Shown piece by piece: positions 2,772 through 19,682 of a DNA stretch of 64,000 nucleotides. The stretch lies in sequence record NC_027399.1; one strand, 5' to 3'. Within the stretch, counting starts at the first letter, position 1; each line of letters begins with the position of its first letter. Position numbers and translations under genes: made by a program. Below the pieces are notes generated by a model that saw only the letters and a list, made by a program, of their open reading frames with translations, did not search any database and was not told the origin of the DNA.

Positions 2772-3194
2772 ATGAGATATGATGTTATAAATGATGTTAG
2801 ATCTGTTTCTGTGGTTAATAAAAAGTACTTCTATAAACCAAAAGGTAAAAACAATAAGAAGTATGAAACCATGATTGATGAATACGGAACAGAAGTGATT
2901 TGTAGTGATGTACCACTTGATTTACCAGAATTATCATATGAATACAATTCTTCAATTGAATACAATGGTGTTGAATTTATTTATAGAACGTATATTCGTG
3001 ATAATTATGAAATAGAAGATGATGTAATATACAGACGTATGACAGATTACACTGAAATGGATGAAGATGAGCTATTCCAGTACTCATTGGTATTCGAGAA
3101 TGATAATTTTTCATTTCATGATGCAGTTAAAATACAAAAATGGTTAATTATGAGATATCGTGTTGTTAATACCACGATTAATGTGGATTTATAA
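2772..3194 (+). CDS. Hypothetical protein
   Basis: 140-aa ORF with AAGG upstream; no recognised motif. Confidence 0.6.
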   Translation: MRYDVINDVRSVSVVNKKYFYKPKGKNNKKYETMIDEYGTEVICSDVPLDLPELSYEYNSSIEYNGVEFIYRTYIRDNYEIEDDVIYRRMTDYTEMDEDELFQYSLVFENDNFSFHDAVKIQKWLIMRYRVVNTTINVDL

Positions 3195-14686: not shown

Positions 14687-14717
14687 AAAAAGGGGAGCAT
14701 ATTAGCTCCCCTTTTTT
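14685..14717. terminator. Bidirectional terminator between gp46 and the convergent nuclease gene
   Basis: AAAAAAAGGGGAGC-atatta-GCTCCCCTTTTTT. Confidence 0.8.
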
Positions 14718-15733
14718 ATTATTGTCATAATTTCATTCAACGATGCAGGTGATACGGTTTCAGTCCACCCATCACCGAATAATTCTTTTGTTAAGTGTCT
14801 TGCTTTTATGGTTCTTTTTATTTCTTTTTCTATGTTAAATGCATCATTACAATTTTCATATACTTTGTGGTATACAACATTCAATTTGTACTTACATTTA
14901 TTTTTATATGAACCCATTCTGTGTTTGATATTCTTTGTTATACCGAATTTATAACCAACTATATTATTATAATCATCAGATACTTCTAAAATGTATATAC
15001 CTGAACTAAAATCAGAAGATTTATAACCATTTTTGTAACTAACAGAATTACACAAAGGACACCCTTTATCTCGCATAAAATTGTCATATGTCATAGACCA
15101 TGTATAATTGCATTTACAAGTTAAAATGACTTTACTAAAAACACCATTAAAGTTCTTTTCATCTATTAATTCAAATTTAATGCCAGTTTCTTTGCTTTTA
15201 ATTTTTAAATTCTCATTTAATTCATTTATACTGTATTTGTGAGTACCTGAACATTTCAAACAACCAATATTATTACTGAAAAATGAATCATAAGTGGTAG
15301 TATTCCATTCGTATGCTTCAGAATGTTTAGTATTGTCATTGCATTTTAGTTTTAAATATGTTTTTGTTTTATTATATTCATCAAACCCGAGGAATTCCAG
15401 TGTCCCACCTCGTTTAATGCATTCATTTTCCACATTTTGAATTAAAATTTCAGGTGTTAACTTATTCAATGAAGGCTTTCTGAACTTTTTTGATTCTATA
15501 TTTCTCAGATATCTATATAATTTGTTAATTCTGTAATTATTATAAGTTATATTATCATGTGTTATTGAAGTAAGTGTATTATTACCTAACCATTTTTCTT
15601 CAATAATGAATCCATTGAATTTTATATTAAATTTGGATAACCTTTTCGATAAATCGTTGAAATATTCCCATGGAGTTCTGGAATTATAGTTAACGTGAAC
15701 TAAAATAATATCATCTGGTAAAGATATTATCAT
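14702..15733 (-). CDS. Putative homing endonuclease: 2 Zn-repeats plus a GIY-YIG/T5orf172-type domain
   Basis: GIYILE...YKFGIT...HR...E...GDGWTET C-terminal domain; repeats ending GCLKC and GCPLC. Confidence 0.7.
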   Translation of the reverse strand: MIISLPDDIILVHVNYNSRTPWEYFNDLSKRLSKFNIKFNGFIIEEKWLGNNTLTSITHDNITYNNYRINKLYRYLRNIESKKFRKPSLNKLTPEILIQNVENECIKRGGTLEFLGFDEYNKTKTYLKLKCNDNTKHSEAYEWNTTTYDSFFSNNIGCLKCSGTHKYSINELNENLKIKSKETGIKFELIDEKNFNGVFSKVILTCKCNYTWSMTYDNFMRDKGCPLCNSVSYKNGYKSSDFSSGIYILEVSDDYNNIVGYKFGITKNIKHRMGSYKNKCKYKLNVVYHKVYENCNDAFNIEKEIKRTIKARHLTKELFGDGWTETVSPASLNEIMTIIKKGS

Positions 15734-16349: not shown

Positions 16350-16385
16350 AAAATAGGTCAGTACTTTTCAGTACTGACCTATTTT
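16350..16385. terminator. Perfect 16-bp hairpin, likely terminator of the gp26/gp51 transcript
   Basis: AAAATAGGTCAGTACT-tttc-AGTACTGACCTATTTT. Confidence 0.75.
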
Positions 16386-16394
16386 TTTCTGATT

Positions 16395-16610
16395 TTATCG
16401 CCCCTCATTTTGTTTACGGACTTTCTTGTTGTATGCTTTAACCATCAAGTCTCGTTCAGTTACTGGCATATTAAGTAACATTTCATACGAGGTATTATCA
16501 ATATATACAGCAGCTTCCATTAATGCTTGTTTAATTTCTTGCTGATTAAACTCTATGTCTCGTATGTATTTTTCTATTTCAGTTGCCTCTAACTGGAGAA
16601 GCTGAGATCG
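16395..16610 (-). CDS. gp51-like baseplate/tail assembly ORF with no proper start, predicted -1 frameshift extension of gp26
   Basis: Hand translation: RSQLLQLEATEIEKYIRDIEFNQQEIKQALMEAAVYIDNTSYEMLLNMPVTERDLMVKAYNKKVRKQNEGR*. Not in the ORF track; an in-frame TGA lies 4 codons upstream of the slippery site. Confidence 0.7.
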   Translation of the reverse strand, partial: RSQLLQLEATEIEKYIRDIEFNQQEIKQALMEAAVYIDNTSYEMLLNMPVTERDLMVKAYNKKVRKQNEGR

Positions 16611-17449
16611 AAAAAACGGGTAATATCATACACCAAATCTTCAATAACCCATTCATGATTACATTCACTACATTCAACCTGCATCGTGTGTTCAACACCA
16701 GTATTTTGCATTGTGTTGATTTCATCCTGAATAGTTTTAAGAACGTCTTTTGACTGATCTCCTACCCATTCTGAAATAAATTCTCGTTCAGTCACTTCAT
16801 CCCCGTCTGGAGTGATAATTTTAGAGATACTATAAACAATACCGTCGAAGTTAATTTTAGTGATAGGTTCAAAAATATCAGAAATGAATAGTTTTGCTCG
16901 GTCTTCATCACTTAACGACTCATCTAAATCGAGATATTTGGATTTGGACTGAATATTGAACATTCGCTCATTTATATCACATTGTTCTTTCCATGTAAGT
17001 GGTTTAAGTTCAATACTTAATCCATTATTTAAAACTACAGTAGGGATTTCTTTAATATATTTTACTGTATTCAATAGCACATTCAAATCACGTTCGATAC
17101 GACCTTCATGGTCACATTCGGGACATTTTACATTAATATCATAAGTATATTCTTTGGTTGCAACTTTAATTGCAATAAGCAGTTGTTCGATATCATTGAT
17201 GTATAATTCATCTGCATTAAGGACGTTCGGGCAGCAATTTTCAATAACTCGTGATACCGCATCCCCGGACATAAGCATATCAGGAGTATTCAGTACTATT
17301 TCATCACGAGCACTGCGAGCACATACCCCAACTTTAATACCTTTATTTCCTAATACACCATCGGGATATTTAATTACATCATTTGAAATAAGTTTAGCAC
17401 TAAGTACTTCAATTTTTGTGTACTTGGCTAGTGGGTTCATCTTACTCAT
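16589..17449 (-). CDS. gp26: Baseplate hub assembly protein, gp26-like
   Basis: NPLAKY...TARDEI-like SARDEIVLNTPDMLMSG...DIEQLLIAIKVAT, CPEC and CSEC pairs, terminal FF; GGAG RBS before the ATG at 17449. Confidence 0.8.
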   Translation of the reverse strand: MSKMNPLAKYTKIEVLSAKLISNDVIKYPDGVLGNKGIKVGVCARSARDEIVLNTPDMLMSGDAVSRVIENCCPNVLNADELYINDIEQLLIAIKVATKEYTYDINVKCPECDHEGRIERDLNVLLNTVKYIKEIPTVVLNNGLSIELKPLTWKEQCDINERMFNIQSKSKYLDLDESLSDEDRAKLFISDIFEPITKINFDGIVYSISKIITPDGDEVTEREFISEWVGDQSKDVLKTIQDEINTMQNTGVEHTMQVECSECNHEWVIEDLVYDITRFFDLSFSS

Positions 17450-17491: not shown

Positions 17492-17503
17492 TATTTATAA
17501 ATG
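17492..17503. promoter_or_regulatory. Overlapping divergent late promoters
   Basis: TATAAATA (minus, 17499-17492) and TATAAATG (plus, 17496-17503) between gp26 and the tape measure gene. Confidence 0.6.
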
Positions 17504-17519: not shown

Positions 17520-19682
17520 ATGGCTGGTACAAGTACGGATTATCTATTACAACAATTGTTAACCAGTAATGAAAAAGCTAATGATAATTTATCTGCGATG
17601 AGAGATTTATTATCAGAAAATTTGAAAAAAAACGGTTCAAATAATAACAATAATAATAATCCAGGAAACGGAAATAATAGAAGAAAGAAAGAAAAGATAT
17701 CATTAAATGATGCTTTAAAAAATATATCCAGAGATGTTAGTGGATTTAGTAGAACTCTCATTAACGGTAGTGCGGATGTTGGAACTGTTACGAATTCGCT
17801 TGGTACCGGAATGAGTAGTGTAATCGGTACATTAGGAAAGGCTGTTCCAGCTATTAGTGGTGTAACTACTGCATTCCAGTTACTAATTGAAGCAGGACTA
17901 TCTGTTTATAATTATCTAAATCAACAACTGGAAATGTATAATAAAATTAATTCCAGTGGTGTTAGTTTATCAAATGGTATGAACTCTATTCGTACTGGTA
18001 GTGCTAATGCGTTAATGAGTATGGACAAATTCGGTAATTCCGTAGTAAAACATGCTGGTGTTATTGCACAATTAAATGGTATATACGGTGATGGTGTTAA
18101 GGAATATGGTGATTTGCTTGGAACATTACAATTAGCACAGGATAAAATAGGTATATATGGTGTATCACAGGAACAAATGGCAGACTTAACCGCGAGGAAT
18201 ATTAAATTCCAGAAACAATTTGGTGGTGCAGAATTAATTAGACAAACTAACCAGGAAAAAAGCACACAAGAATTTATTAAAAATATGACAACTTTTAGTA
18301 AATCAATGGGTGAATCAGTTGATGCAATTTTAAAGAAAACTCAGGATTTTGATAATTCACTTGATGCTCGTGGTTTAGAAGCTGCATTGGAAAACTGGGC
18401 TGGATTAAGTAATAAAGCTGCTACATTAACTACTGATGCATTTATTCAAGCTGCTGCCGGTATGGGTGACGCAGGAAAATCTTTTTTTAAAATAATTTCA
18501 TCACAAGCTGTAACTGGTGCATTACCTACTGAATATATGACTGGTGTTATTGCAGAATTTGCCGAAGAAAACAAAAAAATGTTTATGGGTGGTATTACTG
18601 ATGCAAAGGAAATACGCTCAGCTAACATCAAATGGGTTAGAATGCATAAAGATCAGATTAAGCGTGACATGATGAACCAGATACAACTTGGAAACATCGA
18701 AGCTGCTAACTTCAACCGAAATCTTCTTGATCTGGAAGCGTCTGCAAATGATCCAAAAAATGGACCAAAACAACGTTTAGAGGAATTAACTAATAGATTT
18801 AATAATTGGATTAGTAATACATTTATAAAGCCATTTAATCTTTTAATGGATGCTGGGGTTACATGGTTATTAGATATTTCAGATCAAACAACATCATTTA
18901 ACCAATTTATATCTACTGTATTCAGTCAGGGAATCGACAAAATAATGAGTATGGTAACTAACTTTTTTAAGAACTTTCCAGTACTTAGTGATATAGGAAA
19001 AACTTTATTCGGTGATTCTTATAATACATTGGTTGATAATGTTGGTGGTTTTATTGGTAATTTAGTAAAAATACCTATACAACTGATATCAGTTGTAACC
19101 GATATATGGAATGGTAATTTAGCTGGTGCAAGGGAAACTGTACAAAATGCAATTGCTTCATTTAAACAGAATTTCTTGGGTATGTGGGAAGGTATAAAAG
19201 ATATCAAATTCAGTTTCAGTGACGTTAAAGACCGCTTGGTTAATATTGTAGAAACACTAAAAAATAAATTAATTAATGCATTTGACATTCTTAAATATGT
19301 TTTCGGTGTCAGTGATGAAATGCCAAAAACTGAAAATACAAAAACACCAAGTGCTGAAAAACCAAAAAATGAAAACATAAATACACCCAGTAACAGTAAA
19401 CCGACTGTTAATGATAATAACAGAAAACAACCACAAGTTGATCAAAATGCTTCTAATTATACCCCACCAACTCGTGTGGATGAAGCTCAAGATAATTACA
19501 AAAAATCTCCTGATGATGAAAAAGTTGATAATAATTTACAACCAGTAAATTACGATGAATCAATGGTTGAATTATTAGGACGTGTAACATCTGCGTTAGA
19601 AAAAGCTAACGAATACAATGTACAGAATTCAAATTATCTTAGAACTATATCTGATAATACTCAAATACAACGTAATAGTTAA
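17520..19682 (+). CDS. Putative tape measure / gp29-like tail protein
   Basis: 720 aa, helical Ala/Gly/Gln-rich, with F/W-spaced repeats in the C-terminal half; lies between gp26 and the portal. Confidence 0.6.
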   Translation: MAGTSTDYLLQQLLTSNEKANDNLSAMRDLLSENLKKNGSNNNNNNNPGNGNNRRKKEKISLNDALKNISRDVSGFSRTLINGSADVGTVTNSLGTGMSSVIGTLGKAVPAISGVTTAFQLLIEAGLSVYNYLNQQLEMYNKINSSGVSLSNGMNSIRTGSANALMSMDKFGNSVVKHAGVIAQLNGIYGDGVKEYGDLLGTLQLAQDKIGIYGVSQEQMADLTARNIKFQKQFGGAELIRQTNQEKSTQEFIKNMTTFSKSMGESVDAILKKTQDFDNSLDARGLEAALENWAGLSNKAATLTTDAFIQAAAGMGDAGKSFFKIISSQAVTGALPTEYMTGVIAEFAEENKKMFMGGITDAKEIRSANIKWVRMHKDQIKRDMMNQIQLGNIEAANFNRNLLDLEASANDPKNGPKQRLEELTNRFNNWISNTFIKPFNLLMDAGVTWLLDISDQTTSFNQFISTVFSQGIDKIMSMVTNFFKNFPVLSDIGKTLFGDSYNTLVDNVGGFIGNLVKIPIQLISVVTDIWNGNLAGARETVQNAIASFKQNFLGMWEGIKDIKFSFSDVKDRLVNIVETLKNKLINAFDILKYVFGVSDEMPKTENTKTPSAEKPKNENINTPSNSKPTVNDNNRKQPQVDQNASNYTPPTRVDEAQDNYKKSPDDEKVDNNLQPVNYDESMVELLGRVTSALEKANEYNVQNSNYLRTISDNTQIQRNS

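What the first reader, a model, noticed from the sequence alone, without database searches (positions are those of the whole stretch)
16395..16640. Predicted programmed -1 frameshift fusing gp26 to a start-less gp51-like ORF (G/GT-like chaperone pair)
Seen: gp26 ends ...ACC CGT TTT TTC GAT CTC AGC TTC TCC AGT TAG, with a canonical slippery heptamer T TTT TTC (16616-16610). A -1 slip enters a 71-codon open frame (RSQLLQLEATE...SYEMLLNMPVTERDLMVKAY...) that resembles gp51. That frame has a TGA 4 codons upstream of the slip site and no ATG/GTG/TTG for about 30 codons. Established: lambda-type G/GT tail chaperones use such frameshifts next to the tape measure gene, whereas T4 genes 26 and 51 are separate. 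Inference: here gp26/gp51 are made as a G/GT-like pair; the tape measure gene is the divergent neighbour.
Basis: partly seen in the sequence, partly recalled or inferred. Interest (0 to 1): 0.8.

Follow-up and report, generated by a model that had tools for sequence, protein, structure and literature searches.

The report
Conserved frameshift in phage gp26 gene
The baseplate-hub chaperone gene (gp26) of this giant Klebsiella phage almost certainly makes a second, longer protein by a programmed -1 ribosomal slip, and the same unannotated signal is present in about 170 related phage genes, which would explain why phage T4 alone has two separate genes (26 and 51).

Summary
The window is Klebsiella phage K64-1/RaK2. 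Its gp26 homologue (16589-17449, minus strand, Pfam PF12322) carries an in-frame T TTT TTC at 16616-16610. A 71-codon -1 ORF follows, with no start codon for 30 codons.

The heptamer alone occurs at chance frequency in the window. The comparative evidence is what makes the case:
- Of 183 distinct gp26-family genes fetched, 171 have an in-frame X XXY YYZ heptamer near the 3' end, and 166 are followed by a -1 ORF of at least 55 codons. These come from RaK2-like, Atu_ph07, PA5oct and other jumbo phages, T4-like cyanophages and KVP40-like vibriophages.
- None of 240 other long ORFs in the same loci shows both features.
- The codon before the slip codons varies across 11 amino acids, but its third base always matches the run: T in 163/163 cases, and A in 8/8 cases that use A AAT TTT.
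- The -1 peptide is conserved from its first residue, while start codons are scattered.
- The exceptions are T4-type phages. Their gene 26 has a non-slippery FF and no -1 ORF, and their separate gp51 carries a gp26-like core plus the homologous extension in one frame.

No public record I examined annotates the shift, and no paper I found describes it. The G/GT-like chaperone role and the tape-measure identity of the neighbouring gene remain inferences. No protein data were available.

The parts
16589..17449 (-). gp26-like gene (zero frame, 286 aa): T4-family baseplate hub assembly chaperone, the short product
   Evidence: Pfam PF12322 at 73.8 bits (cut-off 24.5) and phrog_150 at 1.6e-30. Four near-invariant Cys and an invariant C-terminal FF. 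AF2 model with pLDDT 91.9. GGAG at 17458-17455 upstream of the ATG.
16610..16616 (-). Slippery heptamer T TTT TTC in the zero frame of gp26, the proposed -1 tandem-slippage site
   Evidence: Invariant in 15 of 16 RaK2-like loci. An in-frame heptamer is present in 171 of 183 family genes, and its first base co-varies with the run: NNT before TTT TTY in 163/163, NNA before AAT TTT in 8/8.
16395..16610 (-). -1 frame extension ORF (71 codons plus stop) with no start codon for 30 codons; the C-terminal part of the proposed long product
   Evidence: phrog_18291 at 6.8e-31. tblastn finds 74 phage records, all aligned from residue 1. The substitution pattern fits the -1 frame. Related to the cyanophage/T4 gp51-type extension.
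16350..16385 (.). Terminator-like hairpin (16 pairs) ten bases after the stop of the -1 ORF; it closes the transcription unit after the extension, not after the gp26 stop
   Evidence: and the sequence.
17492..17499 (-). TATAAATA, a T4-type late-promoter-like motif 43 bases upstream of the gp26 ATG (inferred)
   Evidence: Read directly. The phage record annotates a late sigma factor nearby. The promoter role rests on established T4 knowledge and was not tested.
17520..19682 (+). Divergent neighbour, a 720-aa virion structural protein and candidate tape measure (unproven)
   Evidence: phrog_14121. RaK2 note 'similar to phiFL4A gp48 tail tape measure protein'. A homologue is named 'Pore-forming tail tip protein' in UniRef. 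The LC-MS/MS note in the fENko-Kae01 record concerns a homologue. No similarity to T4 gp29.

Best explanation
This is a programmed -1 ribosomal frameshift. Most ribosomes translating gp26 mRNA stop at TAG 16591-16589 and make the 286-aa short form. A minority, with tRNA-Phe in both the P and A sites on UUU UUC, slip back one base on U UUU UUC and continue in the -1 frame. That product has the first 280 residues of gp26 followed by a 71-residue, predicted-helical extension (351 aa in all).

The two forms share the zinc-ribbon-containing PF12322 core. That core belongs to the T4 gp26/gp51 family of baseplate-hub assembly chaperones. By analogy with lambda G/GT, I infer that the fixed short:long ratio serves hub and tape-measure assembly.

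The one-gene arrangement is the common state across jumbo phages, T4-like cyanophages and KVP40-like phages. T4-type phages instead encode the short form (gene 26) and the long form (gene 51) as two paralogous genes, and have lost the slip site.

What is shown: the anatomy, the conservation, the codon co-variation, and the collinearity with T4 gp51. What is inferred: that ribosomes actually shift, how often, and the chaperone mechanism.
For: (1) The anatomy is confirmed.

(2) The heptamer is invariant across 15 of 16 RaK2-like loci whose flanking protein identity falls to 30%. It is also present in Phosso, Atu_ph07, RsoM2USA, PA5oct and RAS14 at 21-27% identity, in 80 of 80 IMG/VR jumbo-type loci, in P-SSM3, S-PM2 and Vibrio D490, and in 80 of 80 cyanophage-type loci.

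(3) Control: 166 of 183 family genes have both the heptamer and a -1 ORF of at least 55 codons, against 0 of 240 other long ORFs.

(4) Nucleotide-level selection: the preceding codon spans 14 codons and 11 amino acids, yet ends in T in 163/163 cases before TTT TTY and in A in 8/8 before AAT TTT. The background share of T at third positions is 0.17-0.69. The A AAT TTT variant is an alternative canonical slip site, and it is not a homopolymer.

(5) The -1 peptide is conserved from its first residue. The first start codon ranges from codon 2 to 49, and the zero-frame tail after the heptamer (0-11 codons) is not conserved. Substitutions follow -1 frame periodicity, including in the first 12 codons.

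(6) Natural single-frame equivalent: T4 gp51 is a PF12322 core (residues 1-201) plus a ~48-residue tail. That tail matches phrog_634 and positions 236-280 of phrog_150. The cyanophage -1 pieces match the same profile positions, and the zero-frame gp26 proteins stop at about position 232.

(7) Natural negative control: T4-type gene 26 keeps the FF residues but encodes them as TTC TTT, or has an immediate -1 stop, and has no -1 ORF.

(8) The terminator-like hairpin follows the -1 ORF, not the gp26 stop.
Against: There is no protein, ribosome-profiling or transcript evidence for any member of the family. No downstream stimulatory RNA structure was found (z -0.28, no conserved pairs), and I saw no conserved upstream Shine-Dalgarno-like element, so efficiency may be low. 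TTTTTTC alone is at chance frequency in this AT-rich window. FF is also conserved at the protein level, T4 included, so part of the T-run is protein constraint. Many cyanophages and 121Q have an ATG within 2-7 codons of the gp26 stop, so a separately initiated small protein is possible there. The homology of the K64-1-type extension to the gp51 tail is only moderately supported (one search was not significant).
Confidence: 0.85

Rival explanations
1. The -1 ORF is a separate small protein, the 'gp51' of cyanophage annotations. It would be made by independent initiation or by termination-reinitiation coupled to the gp26 stop, and no fusion product is made.
For: 121Q has a TAATG stop-start overlap. 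In 52 of 80 cyanophage-type loci the first start codon is at codon 4 or 7 of the -1 ORF, and the gp26 stop is always one codon after the heptamer. Depositors annotate the ORF this way in many records.
Against: K64-1 has no ATG/GTG/TTG for 30 codons, and there is no Shine-Dalgarno motif before the ATG at 16520. Other loci have their first start at codons 19-49. Residues upstream of every start codon are conserved. Reinitiation does not explain the invariant heptamer or the co-varying third base of the preceding codon. T4 gp51 shows the extension working as part of a gp26-like polypeptide.
Confidence: 0.08
2. The same long product is made, but by transcriptional slippage: RNA polymerase adds one extra U in the T-run, and the ribosome does not shift.
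For: The site is a run of six T, seven in some relatives and nine in RsoM2USA. Homopolymer runs are known slippage sites (established knowledge).
Against: Six T is short for efficient polymerase slippage (established knowledge). Eight family genes use A AAT TTT, which is not a homopolymer but is a canonical tandem-slippage heptamer. The register is fixed relative to the zero frame, and the X base co-varies with the run. Neither feature is required for polymerase slippage.
Confidence: 0.05
3. Nothing is recoded. The T-run exists only because the C-terminal FF is needed in gp26, and the downstream frame is an unexpressed or chance ORF.
For: FF is invariant at the protein level, also in T4 gp26. 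TTTTTTC is common in this genome.
Against: The -1 ORF is conserved as protein in more than 600 phage records with coding-type substitution periodicity. T4-type gene 26 keeps FF without the slippery codons exactly where the -1 ORF is absent. The control rate is 0 of 240.
Confidence: 0.02

Closest known systems
Lambda gpG/gpGT-type tail assembly chaperones (conserved -1 frameshift of long-tailed phages; Xu, Hendrix and Duda 2004, cited from my own knowledge and listed in the references of PMC9024508)
   Same: Two products share an N-terminus. The slip is at a canonical heptamer a few codons before the stop of the short form. No strong stimulatory RNA structure is present. The proteins are tail-morphogenesis chaperones. 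The signal is conserved although the protein sequences diverge strongly.
   Different: The protein family differs (PF12322, zinc-ribbon-containing, 210-290 aa core). The gene is not between the tube and tape-measure genes on the same strand. The fold match to a known chaperone (HK97 gp10, 2ob9) is not significant. Binding to the tape measure is untested.
Phage T4 gp26 and gp51 (baseplate hub assembly chaperones; PMC3004832 Table 2)
   Same: The K64-1 zero-frame protein belongs to the same Pfam and PHROG family as both. T4 gp51 has the architecture predicted for the frameshift product: a gp26-like core, then a ~48-residue tail collinear with the -1 pieces of relatives.
   Different: T4 uses two divergently transcribed genes and has no slip site. 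K64-1 and most other lineages have one gene plus a -1 ORF. T4 gene 26 also has an annotated internal start product, 26'. I did not look for that feature here.
The small 'gp51 / baseplate hub assembly catalyst' ORFs annotated in cyanophages and KVP40-like phages (phrog_634)
   Same: Same position, same -1 register and same heptamer as in K64-1.
   Different: They are annotated as free-standing genes starting at whatever ATG is available, or are left unannotated where none exists. The K64-1-type extension belongs to a different PHROG (18291) and is linked to them only by profile-profile comparison (E 2.4e-4).
Phage P2 E/E+E' tail chaperone frameshift at a T-rich heptamer (from my own knowledge; not checked with a tool)
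   Same: A myovirus tail-assembly gene with a -1 shift on a run of T.
   Different: The protein family and gene context are unrelated. I recall the comparison from memory only.

Membership tests
Pfam PF12322 / phrog_150 (T4 gp26-gp51 baseplate hub assembly chaperone family) | Profile match above the curated threshold over the whole domain | tested here: met
   PF12322 at 73.8 bits against a 24.5 cut-off, profile positions 41-214 of 219. phrog_150 at 1.6e-30. T4 gp26 and gp51 hit the same models.
Pfam PF12322 / phrog_150 (T4 gp26-gp51 baseplate hub assembly chaperone family) | Two CxxC pairs and the C-terminal FF shared by relatives | tested here: met
   C109, C112, C260, C263 and F279, F280 are invariant or nearly so in alignments of 10 and 67 sequences.
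Canonical -1 programmed ribosomal frameshift signal | X XXY YYZ heptamer in the zero-frame register, conserved in relatives | tested here: met
   T TTT TTC at 16616-16610. An in-frame heptamer is present in 171 of 183 family genes, and the X base co-varies with the run.
Canonical -1 programmed ribosomal frameshift signal | Downstream stimulatory hairpin or pseudoknot (common, but not universal in phage chaperone shifts) | tested here: not met
   MFE z-score -0.28. RNAalifold on 15 relatives predicts no conserved pairs.
Canonical -1 programmed ribosomal frameshift signal | A trans-frame protein actually produced | not testable with these tools
   No proteomic or ribosome-profiling data were available.
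Lambda G/GT-type tail assembly chaperone pair | Short and long forms share an N-terminus through a -1 shift near the end of the short ORF | tested here: met
   Met at the level of gene anatomy and conservation only. T4 gp26 and gp51 act as the two-gene equivalent.
Lambda G/GT-type tail assembly chaperone pair | Gene lies immediately upstream of the tape measure gene on the same strand, after the tube gene | tested here: not met
   In K64-1 the candidate tape measure is a divergent neighbour. In T4, gene 51 is three genes upstream of gene 29 and gene 26 is on the other strand. In Vibrio D490 the gene does follow the tube gene.
Lambda G/GT-type tail assembly chaperone pair | Sequence or fold similarity to known tail assembly chaperones | tested here: inconclusive
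   No Pfam, NCBIfam or PDB sequence hit. In the Foldseek PDB search the hit with the highest probability is the HK97 tail assembly chaperone 2ob9 (probability 0.57, target TM 0.51), but its E-value is 0.93.
Lambda G/GT-type tail assembly chaperone pair | Binds the tape measure and is absent from the finished virion | not testable with these tools
   The literature says only that T4 gp51 is required for assembly but absent from particles (PMC3004832). The CBB homologue is annotated 'structural protein', which I did not examine further.
T4 gp51 (long form) | C-terminal extension homologous to residues ~200-249 of T4 gp51 | tested here: inconclusive
   Clear for cyanophage and vibriophage -1 pieces: phrog_634 at 1e-21 to 1e-29, and BLASTP against gp51 at E 6e-5. 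For the K64-1 type only moderate: hhalign against the cyano/T4 profile gives E 2.4e-4 and probability 44%. Against single T4 gp51 the result is E 0.13.

The most novel reading that the evidence does not exclude
The gp26/gp51 family is the hitherto unrecognised G/GT-type tape-measure chaperone system of T4-like and jumbo myoviruses. The ancestral and still dominant form is one gene whose -1 frameshift sets the short:long ratio. T4, the model phage, is the derived exception: it split the two forms into genes 26 and 51. That would give the long-unexplained 'catalytic' gp51 a concrete role as the long chaperone form.
Probability: 0.45. Interest if true: 0.85.

Novelty: new variant of a known kind. 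Interest (0 to 1): 0.78.

Why it matters
Programmed -1 frameshifts in tail chaperone genes are a hallmark of long-tailed phages, but T4-like phages have been regarded as lacking one. T4 gp51 is still described as an essential hub-assembly protein of unknown function (PMC3004832).

A frameshift conserved from cyanophages to 300-500 kb jumbo phages would have three consequences:
- It would correct the annotation of hundreds of genomes, where the -1 ORF is truncated, called a free-standing 'gp51', or missed altogether.
- It would explain T4 genes 26 and 51 as the two-gene version of a short/long pair.
- It would give a testable handle on how the hub and tape measure are assembled in contractile tails.

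It is also a clean example of recoding detected purely by co-variation at a synonymous site.

Tried and rejected
- Stimulatory RNA structure downstream of the heptamer: none found.
- Naturally fused in-frame homologues among the 100 best protein hits: none. The one long hit (345 aa) is extended at its N-terminus.
- Direct homology of the K64-1 extension to T4 gp51 or gp26 by hhalign against single sequences: not significant.
- PDB sequence search with gp26 and with the 720-aa neighbour: nothing.
- NCBIfam: no family model hits.
- Similarity of the 720-aa neighbour to T4 gp29: none.
- An IMG/VR scan with a five-sequence alignment failed for lack of a conserved block. It was repeated with two sequences.
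- A scan for T4-type gp26 relatives gave only seven loci, so the negative-control clade is small.
- Ten literature searches found no description of a gp26 frameshift.
All queries ended at the heptamer.

Full report
**Identity of the window.** The region is 100% identical to Klebsiella phage K64-1 and 99.9% identical to RaK2 (genus Alcyoneusvirus, ~346 kb jumbo myoviruses). Reading the minus strand, the order is a gp26-like gene, a gap holding a short ORF, then endonuclease VII. The divergent neighbour on the plus strand is a 720-aa virion structural protein, followed by the portal gene.

**Observation check.** The gp26-like ORF runs from ATG 17449 to TAG 16589 (286 aa), with GGAG five bases upstream of the ATG. 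In its zero frame the sequence reads CGT TTT TTC, so T TTT TTC (16616-16610) is a canonical X XXY YYZ heptamer six codons before the stop. The -1 frame has a TGA just upstream and is then open to TAA 16397-16395, giving 71 codons after the heptamer. The first ATG/GTG/TTG in that frame is codon 31. The heptamer alone means nothing in this AT-rich genome: it occurs 44 times against 45 expected.

**What the pieces are.** The zero-frame protein is a member of Pfam PF12322 (73.8 bits) and phrog_150, the family of T4 gp26 and gp51. [quoted passage not shown] An AlphaFold2 model built on 67 homologues is confident (pLDDT 91.9). The -1 piece belongs to phrog_18291, of unknown function. Public records treat it inconsistently:
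- RefSeq K64-1 annotates only its last 41 codons.
- RaK2 annotates nothing there.
- Muenster annotates an opposite-strand ORF.
- 121Q and others start it at whatever ATG is available.
- None of the 30 fetched records has a joined CDS.

**Close relatives.** tblastn with the 71-aa piece finds 74 phage records, and every alignment starts at residue 1, immediately after the heptamer. I fetched 16 RaK2-like loci with hosts spanning Klebsiella, Escherichia, Salmonella, Erwinia, Pectobacterium, Serratia, Yersinia, Cronobacter, Xanthomonas and Vibrio. TTTTTTC is invariant in 15 of them, although the residue before FF varies (R, N, S, H, Y) and protein identity falls to 30%. The one exception is a record flagged UNVERIFIED whose gp26 homologue is annotated in two pieces, so it is uninformative.

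The zero frame ends 1-11 codons after the heptamer, with an unconserved tail. The -1 peptide is conserved from its first residue (R-x-x-L-L-x-x-x-P-E-E...). The first possible start codon lies at codon 2, 3, 5, 6, 13, 15, 16, 19 or 31, depending on the phage. Pairwise differences by codon position fit the -1 frame (0.40/0.27/0.56), including in the first 12 codons.

**Distant relatives.**
- gp26 homologues at 21-27% identity in Sinorhizobium phage Phosso, Agrobacterium phage Atu_ph07, Ralstonia phage RsoM2USA, Pseudomonas phage PA5oct and Stenotrophomonas phage RAS14 all end in FF on an in-frame T TTT TTC or T TTT TTT, followed by a -1 ORF of 73-82 codons.
- An IMG/VR scan with a profile of ten gp26 proteins returned 80 loci at about 30% identity. 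All 80 have an in-frame heptamer in the last 25 codons: 69 TTTTTTC, 2 TTTTTTT and 9 AAATTTT. All have a -1 ORF of 68-93 codons, apart from four that run off their contig.
- T4-like cyanophages (P-SSM3, S-PM2), a KVP40-like vibriophage (D490) and 80 of 80 further cyanophage-type IMG/VR loci have the same T TTT TTC. There the -1 ORF is what depositors call 'gp51 / baseplate hub assembly catalyst'. In S-CAM1 and ACG-2014d, where no early ATG exists, the ORF is simply not annotated.

**Controls.** I extracted all distinct ORFs of at least 150 codons from every fetched locus and classed them with HMMs built from the gp26 alignments.
- Of 183 gp26-family genes, 171 have the in-frame heptamer and 166 also have a -1 ORF of at least 55 codons. 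Five more run off a contig.
- Of 240 other ORFs, 42 have a heptamer by chance and none has the -1 ORF.
- The codon before the two slip codons takes 14 forms coding 11 amino acids. Its third base is T in 163/163 cases before TTT TTY, and A in 8/8 cases before AAT TTT. T at third positions of the same codon boxes elsewhere in these genes ranges from 17% to 69%.

This co-variation of a synonymous position with the run is what selection for X XXY YYZ predicts. Selection on the protein does not predict it. The A AAT TTT variant is a different canonical slip site and is not a homopolymer, which argues for ribosomal rather than transcriptional slippage.

**T4 as natural experiment.** In T4 (NC_000866), gene 26 (208 aa) and gene 51 (249 aa) are divergent, and gene 51 heads the 51-27-28-29 operon that contains the tape measure gene 29. 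T4 gp26 ends in FF followed by three residues. Its FF is encoded TTC TTT, which is not slippery, and gene 25 follows at once with no -1 ORF. A 58%-identical relative has an immediate -1 stop.

T4 gp51 consists of a PF12322 core (residues 1-201) plus a ~48-residue tail that matches phrog_634 and positions 236-280 of phrog_150. The cyanophage -1 pieces match those same profile positions (phrog_634 57-119, E 1e-21 to 1e-29; phrog_150 238-281, E 1.5e-6 for S-PM2). Their zero-frame gp26 proteins cover phrog_150 up to about position 232. In alignments, the gp51 residues corresponding to FF line up with the gp26 C-termini. The gp51 tail then runs collinear with the -1 pieces from their first residue (BLASTP E 6e-5).

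So T4 gp51 is a natural single-frame version of the predicted frameshift product. The only clade that has such a gene is also the only clade without the slip site. It corresponds to the tail of gp51.

For the K64-1 type of extension, the link to the gp51-type tail is moderately supported. A profile-profile comparison gives E 2.4e-4 and probability 44% over 38 columns, with a shared Y-x-x-x-x-x-x-M-x-P-x-E-R pattern. Comparison against T4 gp51 alone is not significant. The identical position, register and heptamer make common origin the simplest reading.

**Mechanism.** I found no downstream RNA structure (z -0.28, no conserved pairs in 15 relatives) and saw no conserved upstream Shine-Dalgarno-like element in the aligned flanks. 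The shift would therefore rest on the heptamer alone, as in several phage chaperone shifts, and is probably of low efficiency. A terminator-like hairpin lies ten bases after the -1 ORF stop, so the transcript covers both frames. A TATAAATA motif 43 bases upstream of the ATG resembles a T4 late promoter (inferred).

**Function.** That the pair works like lambda G/GT is an analogy with partial support. In its favour:
- There are two forms sharing an N-terminus.
- The family is annotated as assembly chaperones.
- T4 gene 51 lies in the operon of the tape measure gene.

Against membership:
- There is no sequence similarity to known tail assembly chaperones.
- The gene position is not canonical.
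- In the Foldseek PDB search, the hit with the highest probability is the HK97 tail assembly chaperone (2ob9, probability 0.57, target TM 0.51), but its E-value is 0.93, so it is only a hint.
- In BFVD the fold matches baseplate hub proteins of many myoviruses, not proteins named chaperones.

The 720-aa neighbour is a virion protein. A depositor likens it to a tape measure, and one homologue carries the UniRef name 'Pore-forming tail tip protein'. It shows no similarity to T4 gp29. Its identity is plausible but not shown.

**Novelty.** Ten full-text searches found no paper describing a frameshift in gp26 or gp51, and no fetched record annotates one. Subscription journals are not covered, so prior description cannot be excluded. 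I rate this a new variant of a known kind: the tail-chaperone frameshift principle in a different protein family, conserved over a very wide range of myoviruses, with T4 as the derived exception.

**Verdict.** A programmed -1 frameshift is very likely (0.85) on comparative grounds. The G/GT-like function is about even odds. The tape-measure claim is unproven.

Noticed in passing
window 16395-16520 (-) and 16426-16545 (+): RefSeq K64-1 annotates a 41-aa 'hypothetical protein', which is just the last 41 codons of the -1 ORF starting at its first ATG. The Muenster record instead annotates a 39-aa ORF on the opposite strand of the same stretch, probably spurious.
   Followed up: partly
window 17492-17499 (-): TATAAATA, the T4 late-promoter consensus, lies 43 bases upstream of the gp26 start. 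A late sigma factor gene is annotated about 5 kb away in the phage record.
   Followed up: no
window 16350-16385: A 16-pair perfect hairpin lies between the -1 ORF and the endonuclease VII gene. It is flanked by T-runs on both strands and could act as a bidirectional terminator.
   Followed up: partly
L026 (Ralstonia phage RsoM2USA), around 1966-1974: The slip site lies in a run of nine T, long enough that transcriptional slippage or sequencing-length uncertainty could matter in this one lineage.
   Followed up: no
L014 (Yersinia phage fHe-Yen9-04) 462-1337: The gp26 homologue is mis-annotated as 'Lead, cadmium, zinc and mercury transporting ATPase', presumably because of its CxxC motifs.
   Followed up: no
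L012 (Pectobacterium phage CBB) 459-1316: The gp26 homologue is annotated 'structural protein'. If it really is in virions, that would differ from T4 gp51, which is absent from particles.
   Followed up: no
L112 (T4) 2803-3090 (-): T4 gene 26 carries an annotated internal-start product 26' (95 aa). T4 therefore also makes two products from gene 26, by a different route. I did not check whether relatives share this.
   Followed up: no
L021 (Escherichia phage CMSTMSU, UNVERIFIED record): The gp26 homologue is annotated in two overlapping pieces and the small ORF is not annotated. The record looks error-prone, and I excluded it from conclusions.
   Followed up: partly
window 14702-15733 (-): A 343-aa ORF downstream of endonuclease VII has T5orf172/MUG113 (GIY-YIG-like) and treble-clef zinc-finger domains. 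It may be a homing-endonuclease-like gene.
   Followed up: no
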